DNA of 64,000 nucleotides from Lytechinus pictus (lineage: Eukaryota), in contig NC_087247.1 in the NCBI RefSeq assembly GCF_037042905.1, positions 1,798,001 to 1,862,000 of the forward strand, in the 5' to 3' direction. A program made the translations under genes and the position numbers. This document shows, piece after piece, positions 3,001-56,290 of the stretch; the first letter of the stretch is position 1, and every line of letters begins with the position of its first letter. Under the pieces are notes generated by a model. It did no database searches. It was not told where the DNA came from and was given only the letters and a program-made list of their open reading frames with translations.

Positions 3001-6000
3001 AGTATTCTCAATATAAGGAAGAAATGTCCTCATTATAAGGAGGTAAAAACTTCTTTAATAGAAGGAAGAAACGTTCTCATTATTATAAGGAGGTAAAGGT
3101 CCTGTACGTTAACGTTCTCAATATAAGGAAGTAAATGTTCTCAATATAAGGAAGAATTGTCCCTGTTATAAGGAAGTAAATGTTCTCAATATAAGGAAGA
3201 AATATCCTCGTTATAAGGAGGTAAATGTTCTCAATATAACGAAGTAAATGTTCTCAATATAAGGAAGAAATGTCCTGTTATAAAGAAGTAAATGATCTCA
3301 ATATAAGGAAGAAACGTTCTTTAATATTGTAGGAAAGAAACATCCTCAATATAAGGAAGTAACGTTCTCAATATAAGGAAGTAACGTTCTCAATATAAGG
3401 AAGAAACGTTCTCAATATAAGGAGGTAAAGGTCCTTAATATAACGAAGTAAATGTTCTCAATATAAGGAAGAAATTTCCTGTTATAAAGAAGTAAATGTT
3501 CTCAATATAAGGAGGTAAATGTCCTGTACGTTAACGTTCTCAATATAAGGAAGTAAATGTTCTCAATATAAGGATGAAACGTTCTCAATATAAGGAGGTA
3601 AAGGTCCTTAATATAACGAAGTAAATGTTCTCAATATAAGGAAGAAATTTCCTGTTATAAAGAAGTAAATGTTCTCAATATAAGGAAGAAATGTCCTCGT
3701 TATAAGGAGATAAAAACTTCTTTAATAGTAGAAGGATGAAACGTCCTCAATATAAGGAAGAAACGTTCTTTAATATTGTAGGGAAGAAACATCCTCAATA
3801 TAAGGAAGTAACGCTCTCAATATAAGGAAGTAACGTTCTCAATATAAGGAGGTAAAGGTCCTTAATATAAGATAAAAACAGGTAAAGGTCCTGTACGTTA
3901 ACGTTCTCAATATAAGGAAGAAATGTTCTCAATATAAGGAGGTAAATGTCCTGTACGTTAACGTTCTCAATATAAGGAAGTAAATGTTCTCAATATAAGG
4001 AAGAAACGTTCTCAATATAAGGAAGAAATGTCCTCATTATAAGGAGGGAACGGTCCTTTAATTTAAGAGAAGAGCATCCTCAATTTAAGGAAGAAACTTC
4101 CTCAATATAAAGAAGTAGAGGTCCTTAATATTATTACGACGAACCTTCCTTAATAAAAGAGAAAACATTCTCAATCTAAGAGAAAACGTCCTCATTATAA
4201 GGAAGAAACGTTCTTTAATATTGTAGGGAAGAAACATCCTCAATATAAGGAAGTAACGCTCTCAATATAAGGAAGTAACGTTCTCAATATAAGGAGGTAA
4301 AGGTCCTTAATATAAGATAAAAACAGGTAAAGGTCCTGTACGTTAACGTTCTCAATATAAGGAAGAAATGTTCTCAATAAAAGGAGGTAAATATCCTGTA
4401 CGTTAACGTTCTCAATATAAGGAAGTAAATGTTCTCAATATAAGGAAGAAACGTTCTCAATATAAGGAAGAAATGTCCTCATTATAAGGAGGGAACGGTC
4501 CTTTAATTTAAGAGAAGAGCATCCTCAATTTAAGGAAGAAACTTTCTCAATATAAAGAAGTAGAGGTCCTTAATATTATTACGACGAACCTTCCTTAATA
4601 AAACAGAAAACATTCTCAATCTAAGAGAAAACGTCCTCATTATAAGGAGGTAAAAACTTCTTTAATAGAAGGATGAAACGTTCTCAATATAAGGAAGTAA
4701 ATGTTCTCAATATAAGGAGGTAAAAGTCATTAATATAAGATGAAAACTTCCTTAATAAAAGCATCCTCAATATAAGGAAATAAACGTTCTCAATATGAAA
4801 ACATCCTTATTTTAAGAGAAAAAAATCCTCAATATAAGGAAGGAATGTCCTCATTATAAGGAGGTAAAAACTTCTTTAATAGTAGAAGGATGAAACGTCC
4901 TCAATATAAGGAAGAAACGTTCTCATTATAAGGAACTAAACGTTCTCAATATAAAAACATCCTTATTTTAAGAGAAAAAATCCTCAATATAAGGAAGAAA
5001 CGTTCTCATTATAAGGAGGTAAAGGTCCTGTACATTAACGTTCTCAATATAAGGAAGAAATGTCCTCATTATAAGGAGGTAAAAACTTCTTTAATAGAAG
5101 GAAGAAACGTTCTCATTATTATAAGGAGGTAAAGGTCCTGTACGTTAACGTTCTCAATATAAGGAAGTAAATGTTCTCAATATAAGGAAGAATTGTCCCT
5201 GTTATAAGGAAGTAAATGTTCTCAATATAAGGAAGAAATATCCTCGTTATAAAGAAGTAAATGTTCTCAATATAAGGAAGAAATGTCCTGTTATAACGAG
5301 GTAAATGTTCTCATTATAAAGAAGTAAATGTTCTCGTTATAACGAGATAAATATCCTCGTTAGAACGAGGTAAATGTTCTCGTTATAAAGAAGTAAATGT
5401 TTTCGTTATAACGAGATAAATATCCTCGTTATAACGAGATAAATATCCTCGTTATAACGAGGTAAATGTTCTCGTTATAACGAGATAAATATCCTCGTTA
5501 TAACGACATAAATATCCTCGTTATAACGAGGTAAATGTTCTCGTTATAAAGAAGTAAATGTTCTCGTTATAACGAAATAAATATCCTCGTTATTACGAGG
5601 TAAATGCTCTCGTTATAACGAGGTAAATGTCTCGTTATAAAGAAGTAAATGTTCTCGTTATAACGAAGTAAATATCCTCGTTATAACGAGGTAAATGTTC
5701 TCATTATAAGGAGGTAAATGTCCTTAATATAACAAAGTAAATATCCTCGTTATAACGAGAATATTAACTTCCTTGTAACGAGAGGTAAAAACTTCTTTAA
5801 TAGAAGGATGAAACGTTCTCAATATAAGGAGGTAAAGGTCCTGTACGTTAAAGTTCTCAATATAAGATAGTAAATGTTCTCAATATAAGGAAGAAACGTT
5901 CTCAATATAAGGAAGAAATGTTCTCATTATAAGGAGGGAACGGTCCTTTAATTTAAGAGAAGAGCATCCTCAATTTAAGGAAGAAACTTCCTCAATATAA

Positions 6001-42960: not shown

Positions 42961-43165
42961 TTTGAAACCAATGAAGTACATGGATTATAAGTAGGACTGT
43001 AACGAGTTTCATGGGATTTGCGATTTTGCTCGATTTCAGCGAAGAAGAAGAAAAAGAAAAACACACAACAAAAGAAAATTATGCAAAAAAAGTAACAAAA
43101 AAAAAGAAAATGATGCAATGAGAAAGAAAGTGAGATCGAGCGAAAAGGAAAAAGTAAACAAAAAA

Positions 43166-43345
43166 NNNNNNNNNNNNNNNNNNNNNNNNNNNNNNNNNNN
43201 NNNNNNNNNNNNNNNNNNNNNNNNNNNNNNNNNNNNNNNNNNNNNNNNNNNNNNNNNNNNNNNNNNNNNNNNNNNNNNNNNNNNNNNNNNNNNNNNNNNN
43301 NNNNNNNNNNNNNNNNNNNNNNNNNNNNNNNNNNNNNNNNNNNNN
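43166..43345. other. N-run (180 nt) covering the 3' junction of the retrotransposon; probably a masked GA/A-rich repeat
   Basis: Lies between an A/G-rich tract (43041-43165) and the element 3' UTR. Confidence 0.7.
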
Positions 43346-43454
43346 ATTTACAAATTATAATCACAAAAGTCAGGTATATAATAAAAGAATAGTTTGACAT
43401 AAACATTCAAATGAGATCAGGTTGATTACAAGCACAGAGTTATAAAACCAAATG

Positions 43455-46400
43455 TTAAATGAGCCATGCAATGCTGCCCTCGTTAATTGTAAAAAGTAAT
43501 CTATTCATACACCATTTACGTGAAAAAGCATCAATATTAGAACATAATTTGTAATAAGTAAATTCATAGAGTATTCTGTTTTTGAGACGATGTAACCAAA
43601 TAATAAGTGGATCGGTGGAATTTGAGGTACGGTACATAAAATAAATGGTACTTTTTAAACTAATAATAAGGAAATTAGCAAGGCGGATAACCTTTCTGTC
43701 ACGCCCTCTGGCATGCGGAATGAGTGCCCAGTATAGGTCAAAATTAAGTTTGAGAGAGGGGAGGAGATTGTTCAACAGTCTATGAAGAAGATTGAGAGAA
43801 GGTTGGATTCCTTTACATTCGATGAACAGATGTTGAATGGTTCCTAGTTCTCCGCACCATCCGCAAAAAGAAGAAATGTCTGTATTAAGATGATGGAGTA
43901 TAGTGAGCGACGGTAAAATATTGTGAAGGAGTTTGTATTGAATATCAGCCTCTTTTTTAGGTGTTGGTAATTGATAGATAGATAGCCAGTTCACTTTTGT
44001 AGATGGATCGAGAAATCCAGTATCATGCCAATGTGAGCTTGATGAGATTGTCGTATTATATAGTTCTTTCCTGTAGATTCCGTAGATAGCTTTAGAAGAA
44101 GCAGTAAGTCCATTTTCGGAAGAAGCCAGAGTGAAGTTGATCGGAGTAACTGGAGCAGACAATAGATCAGAGTATTCGTGTTGACAGCCTGAGTCATTAA
44201 AATATGTAGGAAAAACTTTAGAGAGTGCAGTTCGAATGAGTAATGTTTCACGTTCGATGAGACGCGATGATGGTTGTCGAAGTCCTCTTGGAAAGTTCTT
44301 TTGGAGACAGCTACTCTCAATCCAAAGACCAGTTGAGTGGTTTATCAAATGGCGAACTAGTTTCACTCCGCATGCCATCAGGCGCGTCGGAAAAAAATTA
44401 TCAACATCAATTGCATCAATAATATGAAAACTATTTAAGGGCATGTTAATTGCATGGCTGAAAGAGAGGGATTGTGTCACAATTCGAGCTCCAGATGTCA
44501 ACCAAGCTCGCAGAACTTCACTATAGTAAACTGGAAGACTTGTGTAAAACTTAGGATCAATTCTTGTAAAGAACAAATGGTAATCAAATCCTAATTTACA
44601 ATACTGTCTCAGAAAATGAGCCATAAAGTCGTTTACTGGATGAGAATTTAACGAAAGAAACCGTTGAATAATCGAAAATCTGTAAGTTAGAACACGAGCT
44701 TGGAGACAAGCTAGCCCCAGCCCTCCTTCGTCAGGTTTTTCATACAACACTTCTTTCTTTAACCAGTGCCGCTTATTTGACCAGATAAAATTCACAATTA
44801 AATTCTGAAGTTCGTTTAATACATTTTCAGGAGGAGAAAGAACTGCAAGAACATGAAATATTTTTGATGCAGCGAGCTGGTTTGCAATCAATACCTTGCC
44901 TTTAAATGAGAGTGAGTTCGATAAACGAGACCACGAAATGAAAGTCTTATTAAGTCTTTCTTTACATTTAATCCAGTTTTGTTTAGAATAATTAAACGTG
45001 TTCCCTAAATGAACTCCTAAAAAGGGGAGACCTTCACTATTCCAAGAAAAGTTGAGGGGTTTATCATTCCGCCCTTTCCAACGGCCGACCCAAAGGCCTT
45101 GTGATTTTTTTGTATTTAAACATGCAGCAGAGGCCAGACTAAACATATTGTAAGTTTGTTCAACTAATTCAAAGCCAGCATCGGCTGTAACAAATATCGA
45201 TACATCGTCTGCATATGCAGATACTACACAAGGTTTGTTAATAGCAGGGATATTTAATGCATGATTTGACACGTTCTCTCTTAGTGAGTTCAGGAGAGGC
45301 TCAATGGCGAGAGTATATAGCAACCCTGATAGAGGGCATCCCTGTCGTATTCCTTTCTCAAAGGGGAAGGGAGCTGTCAGGGATCCACACACTTTAATAA
45401 GGCTTTCAGCCCCTTCATACAAAATTCGTATATAAGATATAAAATGACTTCCAAAGCCCATGCGTTTCATAACATTGAATAAATAAACATGATCTACATT
45501 ATCAAATGCCTTTTTCTGGTCCAAGTTCAATACAGCCAAAGAAATATTATCAGTGTTTGCATAGAACAAAATATCTCTAATGAGATTAATGTTGTCATAA
45601 ATAGAACGACCGGGGATACAATAACTTTGGTCTCTTCCAATAACATGGTCAATGCATGATTTTAGCCTACTGGCAAGCAGCCTAGCAAAAATTGTATAGT
45701 CTGTGTTGAGGAGGGAGACGGGACGCCAATTAGAAATATCAGCGAGGTCTCCTTTTTTGGGGAGTAAAGTAATGACCGCCCTCCTAAAAGAGTATGGTAA
45801 AAATCCAGATTCAAGAGAGGAGGTAAGAACTTCGAGAAAATCATCTTTGAGCATGGGCCAAAAGACATGATAAAATTCAGAGGTAAGTCCATCGATACCA
45901 GGAGACTTATTTTTGCCTAGCTGCTTGACAGCATTATCAAGTTCTTCTACAGATATTGGATTATCAAGGTCCTTTGATAAGGACGGATCAAGCGTCTTGA
46001 TATTTACAAGTAAACTATTGATGGCACTCTTGTCAGTTGGCTTTCGAGTGTAAAGAGATTCATAAAAATCCCGAACATGATTTTTTATCTCAGAAGGGTT
46101 CTCCGAAATACGTCCCGAAGCGAGCCGAATGCGGGATATACTTTTTGATAAGGAATTCGTTTTTTCTAAGTTGAAGAAAAAATTGGAGCATGAGTCTGTT
46201 TCATTTGTGTATTTAAAGCGAGACCTCAAAAGAGCTCCGCGTGCTTCATTTTTCAGTAACGAGTTTAATGCATTTCTATGCTCGTCGAGAGTATATTTAT
46301 CTTGTTGGCTAGATTCTTTTGCGCTCTGAAGTTTATCAATCTCTTTGTTAATTTCTATTAGAGCTTGCCTTTTCCTTTGTACTATTTTTTTACTATACAT

Positions 46401-47312
46401 TTGAGTAATTGATTTTATATGAACCTTGCCGAAATCCCACCAAGATGCAAGATTCGGGAAGTCATTTTTTTCTTTTTGCCAATCTGACCAAAAAAGACGA
46501 ATAATATCAATGTAACTTTCGTCTTCCAAAAGAGTGTTATTAAAAATCCAATATGCACTTTTTCCTTTAGCTCGTATTGGGAATTTCAAAGTTAGAGAAA
46601 CTGCAGAGTGGTCAGATAAGGAACAAGGTATAATTTCACACTTATGAATAGAAGAAACTAGACACGATGGTACATAAAATCGATCTAATCTAGACTTTGA
46701 AAAGCCCTGTGCACTGGCTGGATTGTGCCGTTGCCAGGTGAATTTCTTTTCATTTGGATTTAGAAAACGCCATGCATCGCAAAGAGAAGATTTATTCAGA
46801 ACATTTTGCAAAGCCGTAACAAGTTTAGGTCTGCGTTCTGTGAGCGTGCACAAACGATCAATCGCAGGATTTTCAGTGCAATTAAAATCACCCACGATCA
46901 CAATATTATCTTCGCAACAGGTGGAGATATGACAATTAAGGGCATTAATAGCTTTAATTGCCATTTCATCAGATTGAGGAATGAGTGTGTTGTATACATG
47001 ATAAATACAGTTATTATGGGAGAGCTTGTTATACAATATATAGCCATCAAAAACAATACAAGTAGATAAAATATCGACTTGAGAATTATTAACCAAAGTT
47101 GTCACTCCTGACCCTCGAGTAATACCGGGTGAGCAAAAAGGTTTATGCGACCAGTTGCTCCAGCAAGGATTGCTATCTTTAAGGTGGTAAGTTTCCTGTA
47201 AAAATACAACGAGCGGGTTGCATGCAATTTGCTCAACATAAACTCGGAAGGAGGCGTTTTGAGTTTGGGAGGAGCATCCTCCGGTGTTGAGGGTCAGCAT
47301 TGACAGTGCCAT
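43455..47312 (-). CDS. Retrotransposon ORF2: APE endonuclease + reverse transcriptase + C-terminal zinc finger
   Basis: APE motifs TLNTGG, FLQET, VGDFN, FTW, SRLDRFY and SDHSAV. RT motifs KSPGIDG, WRPVSLLNTDY, LDQKKAFDNVDH, GIRQGCPLSGLLY, AYADDV and FLGVHL. C-terminal CGWC...HLFIEC. Confidence 0.97.
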   Translation of the reverse strand: MALSMLTLNTGGCSSQTQNASFRVYVEQIACNPLVVFLQETYHLKDSNPCWSNWSHKPFCSPGITRGSGVTTLVNNSQVDILSTCIVFDGYILYNKLSHNNCIYHVYNTLIPQSDEMAIKAINALNCHISTCCEDNIVIVGDFNCTENPAIDRLCTLTERRPKLVTALQNVLNKSSLCDAWRFLNPNEKKFTWQRHNPASAQGFSKSRLDRFYVPSCLVSSIHKCEIIPCSLSDHSAVSLTLKFPIRAKGKSAYWIFNNTLLEDESYIDIIRLFWSDWQKEKNDFPNLASWWDFGKVHIKSITQMYSKKIVQRKRQALIEINKEIDKLQSAKESSQQDKYTLDEHRNALNSLLKNEARGALLRSRFKYTNETDSCSNFFFNLEKTNSLSKSISRIRLASGRISENPSEIKNHVRDFYESLYTRKPTDKSAINSLLVNIKTLDPSLSKDLDNPISVEELDNAVKQLGKNKSPGIDGLTSEFYHVFWPMLKDDFLEVLTSSLESGFLPYSFRRAVITLLPKKGDLADISNWRPVSLLNTDYTIFARLLASRLKSCIDHVIGRDQSYCIPGRSIYDNINLIRDILFYANTDNISLAVLNLDQKKAFDNVDHVYLFNVMKRMGFGSHFISYIRILYEGAESLIKVCGSLTAPFPFEKGIRQGCPLSGLLYTLAIEPLLNSLRENVSNHALNIPAINKPCVVSAYADDVSIFVTADAGFELVEQTYNMFSLASAACLNTKKSQGLWVGRWKGRNDKPLNFSWNSEGLPFLGVHLGNTFNYSKQNWIKCKERLNKTFISWSRLSNSLSFKGKVLIANQLAASKIFHVLAVLSPPENVLNELQNLIVNFIWSNKRHWLKKEVLYEKPDEGGLGLACLQARVLTYRFSIIQRFLSLNSHPVNDFMAHFLRQYCKLGFDYHLFFTRIDPKFYTSLPVYYSEVLRAWLTSGARIVTQSLSFSHAINMPLNSFHIIDAIDVDNFFPTRLMACGVKLVRHLINHSTGLWIESSCLQKNFPRGLRQPSSRLIERETLLIRTALSKVFPTYFNDSGCQHEYSDLLSAPVTPINFTLASSENGLTASSKAIYGIYRKELYNTTISSSSHWHDTGFLDPSTKVNWLSIYQLPTPKKEADIQYKLLHNILPSLTILHHLNTDISSFCGWCGELGTIQHLFIECKGIQPSLNLLHRLLNNLLPSLKLNFDLYWALIPHARGRDRKVIRLANFLIISLKSTIYFMYRTSNSTDPLIIWLHRLKNRILYEFTYYKLCSNIDAFSRKWCMNRLLFTINEGSIAWLI

Positions 47313-47366
47313 TATGGCTATAGCAACTTGAGCGTACGTAATGAATGGAGAGAAGGTAAAAAGGAA

Positions 47367-48911
47367 TTAGCTCTCCAGAGTGCTGATCAATTTGTATATC
47401 CTCTGCTGCATGTTACGTTTTACTAGGGGGCTGTTTTTCAGGGGCTTTAATTGTTTAACTAGCCCTGGAATATTTGATGTATATTTCCGTGCAATCTGGG
47501 CAGGCTTTTTCCGCCCTTTTACGTTTGACAGAAATTTCACAATTTGGCCTTGGGAGAGGGGGCCTTGAGTCAATGGGAGTGCATCTTCCTTCGGGACATC
47601 TTCATCCGTTTGGGCATCTTCCCAAGTCATGGAGTCAGTGTCGGTAGATGAATCTCCAACTGTGGAGGATGGGGTAGGAGGGATATTGGGGGTTTGGGAG
47701 TCAAGGACTTGCGTTAAGGTTGGAGAGTCTACGGTTTCGGTTTGGGAGGAGGGAGCTTTCCTGGCCACTTTCCGAAGAGGAGAGGGGGCCTTCAGTGTAG
47801 TAAGAGTAGTATTGTTTTCGTTTGATTCGGGTGTTAGTTGCTTACGTTTTGAAACAACTTCAGAGAAAGTTCGGACAGGTGATGGGGGAGTTTTCCACAC
47901 AGGCGAAGGGCACGCAGAAATAGATTTGGGGGGAGGGGACTTGGAGGACACGACTATGGGCGTGGTAGTTGAATTGCTGGACGGCTGAGCAGGTGATGTC
48001 AGAGGTATGTGCAGTGGGGAGGATTGAGGCTTCCTAATGCGCGAGGGGGTGGCTGAGGTAGAAAGGGGCCCACGATCACGAGGTGGTAAACTAGGGAAAT
48101 CAGAGGAGGTGGGTACAGGTGGGGGCATTGTAGTTGCCGCCAAGGGGGGAGGTGATGGTGGCATGGGGTCCGAAACCGTAGTGAGAGGCGGGGAGGATCC
48201 GCGCTGGCGCACTCTCGTGTCATTTGAAACTGGGGCAGCGTTTGTCTTTGACTGATTAGTATTTGTGCTTGTTTGAGGTTTCTTACAATTGCGGGAAATA
48301 TGACCAAATTCACCACAGTTAAAACATCTAACTGACTCAGTTGAAATAAAAACACGATAGTTCATACCTGAAAACACGAAATTAATGTTATCTGGAAGTG
48401 TTGTGTTAGGTTTCACTAACACTTGAACGTGCCTTCTAAAACTCATAATATGGTTTAGACGTTTGTCTTTAAATCCTAGAGGTATTGGTTTGCAGTCGGA
48501 CACAACTTTGCAAAAAGGTGCTAGATTTTCAGTCAAGACAGAATTCGGTAGTTCTGGGTATACATTAGATAAAATGACTCGAGTAGTGGGCCGTACAAGG
48601 GGGGTTAGTTCAAGAAAGGCCCCCTCATACTCAAGGCCTTGTTGTACAGCATTGATAACAGCTTCTTTGGATTTTAGATACACAGCTATGCGACCATTAG
48701 AGATGCGAGAGGCAGATATTACGTCATTAGCGGGTATAGTTGTAGTAAAGACATTGATATAAGATTGTATCGTTACATTTTCAATAGCTTGAAAGCTTAC
48801 ACCATTGTGACGGGTGACATTTTTAAAATGTCCTACATTGTTTAACAAAGGGCCAGCTGCACTTGTGGTACGCTGGCCCTGTACACTACGTTGGTTTGCT
48901 TGACTGGCCAT
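47367..48911 (-). CDS. Retrotransposon ORF1: Tx1-type nucleic-acid-binding protein with CCHC zinc knuckle
   Basis: Tx1-type motifs SASRISNGRIAVYL, RVILSNVYP and HIMSFRRHV. Zinc knuckle CFNCGEFGHISRNC. Long Pro/Ser/Thr-rich region and basic C-terminus. Confidence 0.93.
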   Translation of the reverse strand: MASQANQRSVQGQRTTSAAGPLLNNVGHFKNVTRHNGVSFQAIENVTIQSYINVFTTTIPANDVISASRISNGRIAVYLKSKEAVINAVQQGLEYEGAFLELTPLVRPTTRVILSNVYPELPNSVLTENLAPFCKVVSDCKPIPLGFKDKRLNHIMSFRRHVQVLVKPNTTLPDNINFVFSGMNYRVFISTESVRCFNCGEFGHISRNCKKPQTSTNTNQSKTNAAPVSNDTRVRQRGSSPPLTTVSDPMPPSPPPLAATTMPPPVPTSSDFPSLPPRDRGPLSTSATPSRIRKPQSSPLHIPLTSPAQPSSNSTTTPIVVSSKSPPPKSISACPSPVWKTPPSPVRTFSEVVSKRKQLTPESNENNTTLTTLKAPSPLRKVARKAPSSQTETVDSPTLTQVLDSQTPNIPPTPSSTVGDSSTDTDSMTWEDAQTDEDVPKEDALPLTQGPLSQGQIVKFLSNVKGRKKPAQIARKYTSNIPGLVKQLKPLKNSPLVKRNMQQRIYKLISTLES

Positions 48912-49119
48912 GTACGAACCAGTCTAGAAACCTTACAAAAAATAACAGAAAATGTGTTTAAAAAACACTAAAATTGGTAAACCTGACGAAGGAGGATCGA
49001 GTCTATATCAATCTATAACCCAACACAATTGTAATGGTACAAAAATCAAGGACCAAATGGTCATATAAATCAGTGAAAAAACAGAAAAACCGGAGCTCGA
49101 AAAAACACAACTACCTCAC

Positions 49120-49205
49120 GAAAGAAAGAAAGGAAGAAAGAAAGGAAGAAAGAAAGAAAGAAAAAAAACAGAAAGAAGGAATGAAGGAAAATTAGAGAAA
49201 AGAAA
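49120..49205. repeat. (GAAA)n / GA-rich microsatellite at the retrotransposon 5' junction
   Basis: GAAAGAAAGAAAGGAAGAAAGAAAGGAAGAAAGAAAGAAAGAAAA begins immediately at the element boundary. Confidence 0.9.
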
Positions 49206-51724
49206 AATATAAATAAGGAGACTCATACCTTTAGAGAAGTAAAAGTTTCTTGGGGGCGCATTTGGCATTAACATTTAACCCGCGCACTTTTTGTTCATAA
49301 ATTGCGCTGACCACGTGACCCCGCTTGAGGCGACGATCTCGGCTATCACTTACGATTGATGGCATCAACATTCAGCATCATCATGACCGTGGACTTCAAC
49401 TTCTGAGCGGGTTCGTTTAGTGCCTATATTTCTACGAATAATCTATCATCGGGAATGTACATTGAATCCAAGATGAAAATGAGTTCCCCAAATGTTCTGA
49501 CCAAAACAGTGAGATCCTTTGTTGGCTGTTAGAGGATAATTTGAACACAAGACATTCAGCAAACGTGAGGATGACGTGGAGGGGCTTTAGGCCGAGTCAG
49601 ATGAAACCCCTACCCCACCCTCTTTAATTCGAATCCACTAACAACTGCCTGGTATCTCAATGTATAATGACACACCAGAAAAGTTTTGAAACTGGTTTGG
49701 TATAAGATTAACACCAAGGAAGGACTTAACAAGGGTTGGCTTGGTGCTAAACTGGTGTTGACTCAACATGCATTTCCCTAGCATTGCCTAGTGGAGATAC
49801 GAACAAACAAAGGAGCAACTGCATAGGAGTTGGAAAGGATGCAATTTCAGTGCTTGCACCGGGCCTGTTTTGGCCAGATATAAAATTGTTACCCCTTTTT
49901 AGTCTGCATGATCTACCTTTTACATGCATATTTAGAGAGTTATTACACTTAATCAAATCTACAAAATAATCAATGGGTTATCATGATGCATGATTAGATA
50001 GCTCTGATGAAGTGCGCGATTCAATTTGACAAAGAGAATATACATGGTAAAGTTGTTGTTTCACGTGATTTTCATAAACCACGTACCGTCATGACCGTAG
50101 TCGCGTATTGCTAAATCTGAAGAAAGAGTTTCTCCATGATTGTTGTTTTGCTAATCGTTGCAAGCGCGTTGGCGATCGAGCGCTGCAAAACTCATCAATT
50201 ATTTTTCACCCTTTGGTCATTGAGTGGGAAAGAGGCGCGGAGTCAGGTGCCAATGACAGAGTGCCGAAAAACAATCATATGACAGGTTAAAGAACTTGTA
50301 TATGATCACAAAACAATATTATAAAAGTAGTTTTAGTCATGTTTGAACATGTAACCAGGTATATCTAACTCCCTGGTATAACTTGACTGGAATATGACTT
50401 TTGTAGGTGTTTTGATATTTCATTTGATGGGTGGAAGATAGTGTTTTCAAGTGTTTTAAAAGAGACGATAACTTGTTTTGTCATGCAAAACACGGAAAGC
50501 TTGTGAGGACAGGCTAGTTGATGTGAATTCCATGTTAAATTAACATTTTTCTTTCACACACATATTGGTAACATCCAGCAACTAACAAATAGCCTGTGTC
50601 TATTCTTTTTTGAAAATTGAGATAAAGTCTTTGTACCTATTTCACCGATATAATTAGATCAAAGAAGGACAAATATAATCATAAATCTTAGAAGTGACAT
50701 TAATGACGTTCGCAGTATCTTTGTAATGTCTAATGTCCCCGCCAACTTCCACTGTATCAATATTATTGATAAAATTGATAGACGGTGAATAATACGGGAA
50801 AATACTTGTTTTGAACGAACGGAACCAATGACTCTTCAGTACAGGAAACACTAAATGAGACAGGGAAGTATTCCTAGTTCTACATTACCTGTTACCAAAT
50901 TAAGTTCATTAACAATGTTTGAGCACTGATACGCTTGTTTATCATCCATGTCCTCATACCAGGTTCCCTACAAGGCATGCTGGGACAACCAGGACGGTGA
51001 ATGTTGCCAATAACGGATGAGCAAATTCTCCCTGGCAATGGAACGATGATCTTTTTGTGATCATGTCAAAAAAGAATGCTGGCTTATTGTCGGCGCGCAC
51101 GCTTTGTTGACACGGTTTCAAGGGAATTTCGGATGATTTTTTTGCTGGTCCATTAACCATTAATTGTTTACCTCTATCATTGTTAATTAATTCATTTTTG
51201 ATAAATAAATATCATAATGGGATGTCGAACGATATGGTTCTATCGTGTTGGAAATATTTCCTGTTTCTCACACCTTCGCACATTTTTTAGCTTAAAGAAA
51301 AAAAAACATTTTGCTATGAACTTTTAAACTATAAAAAACAAATGATGGAATTCCCTTGCAGAAGGTTTTATGAACTAGATATTTCTAACTGATATTGTCA
51401 AGTCCACATGTAAAAGCCAATTAATAAAACTTAGCGACTCAAACCTTATATAAAATGCTATCTCAGGCTTCAATTCTTCTTAATATCAGGGAAGAAGAAA
51501 ATGTCAAATTGCCTGGTAGATGACTCGTATTGCAACACCTCAAATAAGGTGCTAACTCTCGGTTTTTGGTAATCGTTTGCAATTATTCACACCTTTGTAA
51601 AACCAACTTGAGGTTCATATCATAGTTTACTTTTCCCGATAGCAGCTGTAATGGAAGGGGCGAATTGGAAGCATTTATTAAGTAAAAACTTGGTCTCCAA
51701 ATTGATATTAAAATCTCTATTCTT

Positions 51725-52084
51725 AATGATGATAATGATAATAATAATAATAATAATAATAATGATAATAATAATAATAATAATAATAATGATAATAATA
51801 ATAATAATATTAATAATAGGCATTTGTATAGTGCCATCTATCTAGAAACAATATATTTCGAGGCGCATTATTATTATTATTACCCCGGCTTTAGCTCGAG
51901 CTGCCTTTCAGCGCTCGTGCATTCGAGGAATTAATCCTGCTGGGTACCCATTTTTCTCACCTGGGTCGAGTGCAGCACAGTGGATAAATTTCTTGCTGAA
52001 GGAAAACACGCCATGGCTAGGATTCGAACCTACGACCCTCTGTTTGAAAGGCGAGAGTCAGAACCCCTAGACCACGACGCGCCC
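51725..52084 (-). mobile_element. tRNA-derived SINE with CORE-like central region and (ATT)n tail
   Basis: Minus strand begins GGGCGCGTCGTGGTCTAGGGG (A box) ... GGTTCGAATCC (B box). It continues CCTTCAGCAAGAAATTTATCCAC...ACCCAGGTG...AATGGGTACC and ends GCACTATACAAATGCCTATT(ATT)n. The tail is the (AAT)n run at 51725-51818. Confidence 0.85.
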
Positions 52085-52910: not shown

Positions 52911-53074
52911 NNNNNNNNNNNNNNNNNNNNNNNNNNNNNNNNNNNNNNNNNNNNNNNNNNNNNNNNNNNNNNNNNNNNNNNNNNNNNNNNNNNNNNNNNN
53001 NNNNNNNNNNNNNNNNNNNNNNNNNNNNNNNNNNNNNNNNNNNNNNNNNNNNNNNNNNNNNNNNNNNNNNNNNN
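52911..53074. other. N-run (164 nt), probably masked CT-rich repeat
   Basis: Preceded by poly-C and CT-rich sequence. Confidence 0.7.
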
Positions 53075-56044: not shown

Positions 56045-56290
56045 TCCGTTTTATTCATTTATTTCATTTATATATCTTCATTTCTTTTTCACCCATTAAT
56101 TCATTTTATACATTCATTCGTTTATTCATTCTTTGATTAATTTATTTATTCGCTCGTTCATTCATTGATAAATATAATTGTTCGTTCATTCATTCATTTT
56201 CATTAATTCGTCCATTTTTCTTTTCTTCATTCATTCATTCATTCACTTGTTCGTTTGTTTATTCATTTCTTCATTCATTCCTTTTCATTG
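56045..56290. repeat. Degenerate (CATT)n microsatellite
   Basis: Many TTCA/CATT repeats directly downstream of the exon 2 donor. Confidence 0.8.

What the first reader, a model, noticed from the sequence alone, without database searches (positions are those of the whole stretch)
43041..49205. Intact Tx1-group retrotransposon sitting in a (GAAA)n/(TTTC)n tract: candidate microsatellite-specific, possibly active family
Seen: both ORFs are uninterrupted and the catalytic APE and RT motifs are present. The 5' end joins directly to (TTTC)n on the element strand. The 3' junction falls in a masked run next to more A/G-rich sequence. Established: the Tx1 group contains sequence-specific families targeting U2 snRNA (Keno), tRNA arrays (Dewa), 5S rDNA (Mutsu) and pyrimidine microsatellites (Kibi in (TC)n, Koshi in (TTC)n), with specificity set by the APE domain. 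Inference: this may be a family specific for the tetranucleotide (TTTC)n, and a young copy usable for studying or engineering site-specific integration.
Basis: partly seen in the sequence, partly recalled or inferred. Interest (0 to 1): 0.7.

Follow-up and report, generated by a model that had tools for sequence, protein, structure and literature searches.

The report
TTTC-microsatellite-seeking Tx1-type LINE family
This is one copy of a very young, probably still active jumping gene (a Tx1-type LINE) that inserts only into (TTTC)n microsatellites, a clean new example of a kind of element already described in crocodilians and fishes.

Summary
On the minus strand lie a 208-nt leader, an open ORF1 (514 aa, CCHC knuckle) and an open ORF2 (1285 aa, APE endonuclease, reverse transcriptase and zf-RVT, catalytic residues kept). 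(TTTC)n abuts the 5' end.

The gap at 43166-43345 starts 109 nt after the ORF2 stop, so no frame crosses it. It hides only this copy's 3' junction.

The genome holds at least 40 copies that are 97-100% alike, and at least 22 have a full open ORF2.

- All 30 5' ends examined read TTTC|GTGAGG.
- All 29 other 3' ends read ...GAAAAGT[C/A](A)3-33GT followed by (CTTT)n.
- A 5'-truncated copy also abuts (CTTT)n.
- Seven insertions lie in the internal (CTTT)n of an unrelated repeat. Ten uninterrupted copies of that repeat keep 164-284 nt where the one filled copy measured the same way has 5989.

The microsatellite is therefore the target, not part of the element.

ORF2 is nearest to proteins labelled Tx1, and among solved structures to human L1 ORF2p.

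Kojima 2015 (PMC4494074) already reports crocodilian Tx1 families that prefer (TTCC)n or (TTTC)n. Transcription and insertion polymorphism could not be tested.

The parts
49120..49190 (-). upstream target tract: imperfect (TTTC)n on the element strand, directly 5' of the element
   Evidence: TRF finds (GAAA)18 with 80% matches; sequence read. The same tract, 23-381 nt long, lies upstream of all 30 copies.
48912..49119 (-). 5' untranslated leader (208 nt), beginning GTGAGGTAG
   Evidence: 97-100% identical over its full length in 39 places of the genome. Homology stops at the same base in all of them.
47367..48911 (-). ORF1, 514 aa, CCHC zinc knuckle at aa 195-211 (48279-48329); proline/serine-rich second half
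   Evidence: About 26 copies have it open over its full length. The N-terminal 230 aa resemble CCHC/RNA-binding proteins in the Atlas; this is a lead only.
43455..47312 (-). ORF2, 1285 aa: APE endonuclease (aa 6-235, 46608-47297), reverse transcriptase (aa 518-768, 45009-45761), zf-RVT (aa 1106-1167, 43812-43997)
   Evidence: At least 22 copies have it open over residues 1-1285 at 98-100% identity.
43346..43454 (-). readable part of the 3' untranslated region (109 nt)
   Evidence: 98-100% identical in 39 other places.
43166..43345 (.). assembly gap (N): holds this copy's 3' end and 3' junction. Not read and not filled.
   Evidence: In 29 other copies, at their own loci, the element ends a few tens of nt past the homologous point and (CTTT)n of 18-413 nt follows.
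43041..43165 (-). distal 3' flank: degenerate pyrimidine-rich sequence on the element strand, with only short CTTT runs
   Evidence: Similar degenerate pyrimidine tracts lie beyond the pure (CTTT)n in other copies.

Best explanation
The window holds one full-length copy of a very young non-LTR retrotransposon family of the L1 group, Tx1 type. Its parts are ORF1 with a CCHC knuckle, and ORF2 with an APE endonuclease, a reverse transcriptase and a C-terminal zinc-binding domain. The family integrates only into (TTTC)n.(GAAA)n microsatellites, always with the pyrimidine strand as its sense strand and always between two repeat units.

Shown here:
- the strict flank pattern;
- that the microsatellite existed before insertion;
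- the youth of the family and its many copies with open frames.

Inferred:
- Integration is by target-primed reverse transcription. The endonuclease nicks the purine strand (GAAA)n, and the freed 3' end primes copying of the RNA from its 3' end (...GAAAAGUC-A(n)-GU).
- The fixed phase at the 3' junction would follow if transcripts read through into the downstream (CUUU)n and anneal to the nicked target.
- The variable A-run comes from slippage.
- Because each insertion leaves repeat on both sides, further hits build head-to-tail arrays.
For: Copy number and age. There are at least 40 places with the 5' leader or the 3' UTR at 97-100% identity, on at least 15 large contigs. Over the first 1.7 kb the median divergence from the majority letter is 0.18%, and the median pairwise difference is 0.6%. 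At least 22 copies have ORF2 open over 1-1285, and about 26 have ORF1 open.

Junctions. 30/30 5' junctions end ...TTTC|GTGAGG, and 22 of them have six perfect CTTT units. 29/29 other 3' ends read GAAAAGT[C/A]-(A)3-33-GT and then CTTT units (27) or ATTT (2). Tract lengths are 23-381 nt upstream and 18-413 nt downstream, next to unrelated outer flanks.

Discrimination between motifs. Neighbouring (CCTT)n, (CTGT)n and (CT)n stretches occur in several flanks, yet the junction always lies in the CTTT part.

The tract existed before insertion. Seven insertions are bracketed by the two halves (X1, X2) of an unrelated repeat. Ten uninterrupted copies of that repeat have 164-284 nt between X1 and X2, against 5989 in a filled one. 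In three filled copies the flanking tracts sum to about 190-300 nt.

Truncated copy. L056 starts at element position 4166 and is still preceded directly by (CTTT)n.

Family. The best named relatives are 'transposon TX1 149 kDa protein', 'YTX2 protein' and two 'pol-like protein' entries from fish. The best solved structure is human L1 ORF2p (E 6.5e-72). The best hit for the endonuclease alone is 2v0r, 'LTX'.

Chance. Background (CTTT)5+ coverage is 0-0.7%.
Against: This copy's own 3' junction is unread because of the gap. The sequence on the low side of the gap is only degenerate pyrimidine-rich, not clean (TTTC)n.

There is no direct evidence of activity.

The nick site, the read-through and annealing step, and the role of the APE domain are inferred from junction sequences alone.

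Target-site duplications cannot be seen inside a microsatellite.

Tx1 placement rests on names given by sources and on a midpoint-rooted tree without L1 outgroups. There the element sits in a 24-row unnamed clade that is sister to the fish clade, not inside it.

Some tandem copies may come from unequal crossing-over rather than from repeated insertion.
Confidence: 0.88

Rival explanations
1. The (CTTT)n runs are made by the element itself, as a microsatellite 3' tail of the kind many LINEs carry. Integration is otherwise random, and the upstream run is the tail of an older copy.
For: The 3' end is always followed by (CTTT)n. Head-to-tail arrays exist in which the upstream repeat does follow another copy's 3' end (L022, L024, L057, L004/L032).
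Against: Only 4 of 30 upstream flanks contain another copy. The rest pass from (CTTT)n into unrelated sequence. Uninterrupted copies of repeat X already hold a 164-284-nt spacer where filled copies hold the element, and the two flanking tracts of filled copies add up to the same length. A 5'-truncated copy has the repeat upstream.
Confidence: 0.03
2. The true target is the repeat X, a likely non-autonomous DNA transposon, as frog Tx1 targets Tx1D. The microsatellite is incidental.
For: 7 of about 36 insertions lie in X at the same spot. Earlier first-reader notes on this genome read similar Tx1-type elements as transposon-targeting.
Against: Most copies have no X sequence on either side within 1.5 kb. 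The only feature shared by all junctions is (CTTT)n. X has at least 280 candidate copies, each with a tract of about 200 nt, so it is simply a large supplier of target.
Confidence: 0.03
3. The copies spread mainly as DNA, by segmental duplication or unequal crossing-over in microsatellite-rich regions, and not by recent retrotransposition. The family would then be no longer mobile.
For: There are tandem arrays with spacings of 5.8-6.6 kb on C1, C8, C9, C12 and C14. Activity was not tested directly.
Against: Outer flanks differ between copies on at least 15 contigs. Homology ends at exactly the same bases at both ends. The A-run differs from copy to copy. Many frames are open and divergence is near zero. 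A 5'-truncated copy is the usual by-product of reverse transcription.
Confidence: 0.05

Closest known systems
Crocodilian Tx1 families Tx1-1_Crp, Tx1-5_Crp, Tx1-6_Crp, Tx1-1_Gav, Tx1-2/3/5/8_AMi (Kojima 2015, PMC4494074)
   Same: [quoted passage not shown] This is the same kind of target and the same clade label.
   Different: The host is a vertebrate, and that paper uses a threshold of only 20% or more of flanks. Here 59 of 59 junctions lie in (CTTT)n and none in (TTCC)n. Their sequences were not at hand, so the relationship was not tested. In my tree the element lies in an unnamed clade outside the fish Tx1 group.
Kibi ((TC)n) and Koshi ((TTC)n) of teleost fishes (Kojima and Fujiwara 2004, as cited in PMC4494074 and PMC3812793)
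   Same: They are APE-type Tx1-clade elements specific for pyrimidine microsatellites.
   Different: The repeat unit is 2 or 3 nt, not 4. The 2004 paper is not held. I could not tell which elements the two fish 'pol-like protein' entries in my tree are.
Tx1L of Xenopus laevis and human L1
   Same: The ORF2 plan is the same: APE, RT and a C-terminal cysteine-rich domain. Human L1 ORF2p is the best solved match over residues 3-868, and the catalytic endonuclease residues align. Proteins that sources name after Tx1 are among the best named relatives.
   Different: Tx1L targets a DNA transposon (PMC4494074). L1 has only a loose TTTT/AA preference and ends in a plain poly(A). This element ends A(n)GT and lands only in (TTTC)n.
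Dong/R4 elements in (TAA)n
   Same: They are microsatellite-specific LINEs that build head-to-tail arrays. Earlier notes report them in this same genome.
   Different: Dong uses a restriction-like endonuclease and belongs to another clade (PMC4640811). Here the endonuclease is APE-type.

Membership tests
Non-LTR retrotransposon, L1 group | ORF2 with an N-terminal APE endonuclease followed by a reverse transcriptase, and no LTRs | tested here: met
   Pfam Exo_endo_phos at aa 6-235 and RVT_1 at aa 518-768. Human L1 ORF2p matches at E 6.5e-72 over residues 3-868. Catalytic residues and YADD are present. Homology between copies ends at simple junctions with no terminal repeats.
Tx1 clade | RT/ORF2 groups with Tx1 rather than with other L1-group lineages | tested here: inconclusive
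   The best named relatives are Tx1-labelled fish proteins at 29-34% identity. In the tree the element lies in a starred 24-row unnamed clade that is sister to the clade holding all Tx1-labelled rows. No L1 or other outgroup, and no Repbase reference, could be included.
Tx1 clade | C-terminal zinc-binding domain in ORF2, and ORF1 with a CCHC knuckle | tested here: met
   zf-RVT at E 3e-5, 25 bits, just under Pfam's 27.5-bit cut-off. zf-CCHC at 28.4 bits, above its cut-off. That these features mark Tx1-type elements is my own knowledge.
Target-specific Tx1 families (Kibi/Koshi/crocodilian group) | Insertions found in one kind of pyrimidine microsatellite (Kojima 2015 criterion: at least 20% of flanks) | tested here: met
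   30/30 5' flanks and 29/29 other 3' flanks are (CTTT)n. The tract existed before insertion.
Target-specific Tx1 families (Kibi/Koshi/crocodilian group) | Phylogenetic position next to Kibi, Koshi and the crocodilian (TTTC)n families | not testable with these tools
   Reference sequences are in Repbase. The 2004 paper is not held. The element names of the two Kojima-era GenBank entries could not be recovered.
Active (currently mobile) family | Transcripts and insertion differences between individuals | not testable with these tools
The evidence is indirect only: many open frames and about 0.2% divergence.

The most novel reading that the evidence does not exclude
The element belongs to an echinoderm Tx1 lineage, the 24-row clade, that is separate from the vertebrate Kibi/Koshi/crocodilian group. 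On this reading it reached strict (TTTC)n specificity on its own. Its fixed-phase junctions come from annealing of read-through (CUUU)n RNA to the nicked target rather than from the endonuclease alone. That would make it a natural, currently mobile system for separating the contributions of nuclease and RNA to site choice, in a sea urchin that can be manipulated genetically.
Probability: 0.3. Interest if true: 0.5.

Novelty: new member of a known kind. Interest (0 to 1): 0.38.

Why it matters
Site-specific LINEs are models for how a retrotransposon endonuclease and its RNA choose a target, and they are starting points for targeted gene insertion. This family is unusually clean: every junction examined is in the target, in one phase. 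It is also unusually fresh, with at least 22 copies carrying an open full-length ORF2, so enzyme and target can be taken straight from the genome. It also explains why some (GAAA)n loci in this genome are interrupted, expanded into arrays or hard to assemble, as the gap here shows. It does not add a new kind of element or of target.

Tried and rejected

- L034, one of the 30 loci returned, is the window's own place in G000. It carries letters where the window has N.
- My script printed all 30 loci before I noticed.
- I did not seek those letters. I excluded L034 from every later script.
- No count or claim rests on it, and I do not quote it.
- The 3' junction statements rest on the 29 other copies at their own loci, and I do not transfer them to the gap.

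Only 1.5 kb on each side of the two end probes could be read. Full-length statements therefore rest on the hit tables.
The flanks of the 24 closest relatives (46-78% identity) could not be tabulated, so the age of the specificity is unknown.
There is no expression or polymorphism test, and read laying was not used.
- Kojima and Fujiwara 2004 is not held.
- PMC2684134 gave no accession numbers.

**Other**
- No uninterrupted X copy lies in the DNA I hold. The empty sites are therefore shown by spacing, not by letters.
- The 172-aa ORF across the gap is rejected as an artefact of N.
- Rejected readings: the element makes its own repeat; the target is repeat X; spread by DNA duplication only (see rivals).
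Full report
**What is in the window**

- The element lies on the minus strand. Reading 5' to 3' on that strand:
  - An imperfect (TTTC)n tract at 49190-49120. TRF reports (GAAA)18 at 80% matches.
  - A 208-nt leader that begins GTGAGGTAG at 49119.
  - ORF1 at 48911-47367, 514 aa.
  - A 54-nt spacer.
  - ORF2 at 47312-43455, 1285 aa.
  - 109 nt of 3' UTR, then the assembly gap at 43345-43166.
  - Degenerate pyrimidine-rich sequence down to about 43041.
- Pfam finds a CCHC knuckle in ORF1. In ORF2 it finds Exo_endo_phos (aa 6-235), RVT_1 (aa 518-768, E 1e-30) and zf-RVT (aa 1106-1167).
- Against solved structures the best match is human L1 ORF2p (E 6.5e-72, residues 3-868).
- The endonuclease part aligns along its whole length with L1 endonuclease. 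The catalytic N, E, D/N, D and D/H are in place. The RT box reads YADD.

**The gap, as the scan's program asked**

- The gap starts 109 nt after the ORF2 stop codon. No reading frame of the element crosses it, so the question of frame does not arise.
- The 172-aa ORF listed across it is an artefact of N.
- What the gap hides is this copy's 3' end and 3' junction. I did not fill it.
- One slip must be stated. Among the 30 loci returned, L034 is the window's own place in the whole-genome copy, and there the stretch is not N. My script printed it with the others before I noticed. I left L034 out of all later work.

**The family**

- The 5' leader and the 3' UTR each find 40 scored places at 97-100% identity (with a few weaker ones), on at least 15 large contigs of an 812-Mb genome.
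- The 5' and 3' hits pair up at about 5.8 kb, so most copies are full length.
- A six-frame search with ORF2 finds at least 22 copies matching residues 1-1285 at 98-100% with no stop.
- ORF1 is open over its full length in about 26 copies.
- Over the first 1.7 kb of 29 copies the median pairwise difference is 0.6%. The median distance to the majority letter is 0.18%, three copies are at zero, and the window's copy is at 0.47%.
- The family is therefore very young and has many copies with open frames. The window's copy is one of many and is not special.

**The flanks**

- In all 30 copies whose 5' end I hold, homology stops at the same base and the preceding sequence ends ...TTTC. In 22 of them the last 25 nt are perfect CTTT units.
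- In all 29 other copies whose 3' end I hold, the element ends GAAAAGT[C/A], then an A-run of 3 to 33, then GT. CTTT units follow in 27 copies and ATTT in 2.
- Orientation and phase are thus constant. Depending on where one base is assigned, the element sits exactly between two repeat units.
- The adjoining tracts measure 23-381 nt upstream and 18-413 nt downstream. Beyond them the flanks are mostly unrelated to each other.
- Several flanks also hold (CCTT)n, (CTGT)n or (CT)n stretches, yet the junction always lies in the CTTT part.
- Elsewhere, (CTTT)5+ covers none of 55.5 kb of the window and 0.7% of the distant flanks. Chance is excluded.

**Target, or part of the element?** Three results decide for target.

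- First, seven insertions are bracketed by the two halves (X1 upstream, X2 downstream) of an unrelated, non-coding repeat. One of the seven is a two-copy array, and for two of the seven only one half lies in the DNA I hold.
  - Genome searches with X1 and X2 (about 280 candidates each) show ten copies in which X1 and X2 are 164-284 nt apart. The filled copy on C10 has 5989 nt.
  - In three filled copies the two microsatellite arms add up to about 190-300 nt. The tract was there first, and nothing large was duplicated or lost.
  - I could not read the letters of the uninterrupted copies, so this rests on spacing.
- Second, one 5'-truncated copy (L056) begins at element position 4166. It is still preceded directly by more than 100 nt of (CTTT)n, inside another X copy. 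The upstream repeat cannot be part of the element's 5' end.
- Third, only 4 of 30 upstream flanks contain another copy of the element. The upstream repeat is therefore not just an older copy's tail.

**Arrays**

- Head-to-tail pairs and triplets occur on C1, C8, C9, C12 and C14, with 24 to about 530 nt of (CTTT)n between copies.
- Each insertion leaves target on both sides, so repeated hits are expected. Unequal crossing-over may add to this, and I did not separate the two.

**How it most likely works**

- Shown: strict, oriented, in-phase residence in a pre-existing (TTTC)n; an APE-type endonuclease and an RT with intact catalytic residues; 5' truncation in at least one copy.
- Inferred from what is established for L1-group and other APE-type site-specific LINEs (Takahashi and Fujiwara 2002, as cited in PMC4494074):
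  - The endonuclease nicks the purine strand (GAAA)n. The 3' end primes reverse transcription from the RNA's 3' end, and the second strand is then cut and joined.
  - The GT (or GTC) after the variable A-run is not microsatellite, so it must come from the RNA. The element therefore does not end in a plain poly(A).
  - The constant phase at the 3' junction would follow most simply if transcripts run on into the downstream (CUUU)n and pair with the nicked target, as proposed for other site-specific LINEs. That comparison is my own knowledge and is not tested.
  - The A-run length would vary by slippage.
  - The constant phase at the 5' junction needs either a phase-specific second cut or pairing with upstream repeat. 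This is open.

**Family placement**

- The word-indexed protein search (residues 1-500) gives 25 unnamed relatives at 46-78% identity. After those come proteins at 29-36%, including 'transposon TX1 uncharacterized 149 kDa protein', 'YTX2 protein' and two fish 'pol-like protein' entries (BAC82605, BAC82609).
- No identical or near-identical protein is in that collection.
- In a quick ML tree of 90 rows the element lies in a starred clade of 24 unnamed rows. That clade is sister to the clade holding all Tx1-labelled fish proteins.
- The tree has no L1 outgroup and is rooted at the midpoint. It shows nearness to Tx1-labelled proteins, not proven clade membership.
- The endonuclease alone matches best the PDB entry named LTX (2v0r), slightly above native L1 endonuclease. 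As I recall, LTX is the L1 enzyme carrying a Tx1 loop.

**Comparison with what is known**

- Kibi ((TC)n) and Koshi ((TTC)n) are the classic Tx1-clade microsatellite seekers (PMC4494074, PMC3812793).
- A Tx1-type element aiming at (TTTC)n is therefore a known kind.
- In the paper library no other paper couples Tx1 with TTTC. None describes a sea-urchin Tx1 family with a microsatellite target.
- Repbase and Dfam could not be consulted.
- An earlier follow-up note of this scan names the genome as the sea urchin Lytechinus pictus. I did not check that.
- Another first-reader note on this genome (s1-323564, 5774 letters, 'Tx1-type LINE sitting inside a DNA-transposon repeat') may be another copy of this family lying in repeat X. 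If so, my result suggests the microsatellite inside that repeat is the target, not the repeat.

**Verdict**

- This is a new member of a known kind: a strictly (TTTC)n-specific, very young, probably active Tx1-type LINE family.
- It is useful as a clean experimental system but not surprising in principle.
- Activity, the nick site, the RNA-annealing step and the relation to the vertebrate families remain to be tested.

Noticed in passing
L006:1-1437, L025:1-1336, L047:1867-1969 and relatives (not in the window): Repeat 'X' is a non-coding repeat of more than 1.4 kb with internal subrepeats of about 100-117 bp. About 105 nt before its end (...CTAGCTACGGCCCTG) it carries an internal (CTTT)n of about 200 nt. 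There are roughly 280 candidate copies at up to 99-100% identity, and several lie as inverted pairs 3-14 kb apart. It is probably the long terminal repeat of a young DNA transposon, and it is a major supplier of target for this LINE.
   Followed up: partly
window 11-23432: A 23-kb satellite array with a basic unit of about 22-23 bp (GTTCTCAATATAAGGAAGAAAT-like) and higher-order periods of 83, 153, 215 and 445 bp.
   Followed up: no
window 32495-32841, 37372-37865, 52911-53074: Three further runs of N in the window. The 249-aa ORF at 32348-33097(-) spans the first and is probably an artefact of N.
   Followed up: no
L016 (G000:C6:7212098-7215307) with L038: In one copy only the first 278 nt of the 5' end match and unrelated DNA follows. 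Its 3' part lies about 11 kb away and carries an internal deletion. It is likely a copy interrupted by a later insertion.
   Followed up: no
L035 and L060, 3' tails: In two copies the first unit after the tail reads ATTT, not CTTT. In L035 the preceding GAAAAGTC also reads GAAAAGTA. This hints that the A(n)GTC tail is a re-copy of the element's own AAAAGTC, and that the base after GT belongs to the element.
   Followed up: no
genome hits (e.g. G000:C1:42023077, C17:29229482, C14:17696311): At least nine places encode an open ORF1-like protein only 52-53% identical to this ORF1 over aa 31-215. These are related Tx1-type families in the same genome whose targets are unknown to me.
   Followed up: no
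window 51724-51818 and 56094-56280: (TAA)32 and an imperfect (CATT)47 microsatellite lie downstream of the finding. Earlier notes report (TAA)n-seeking Dong elements in this genome. None is seen at this tract.
   Followed up: no
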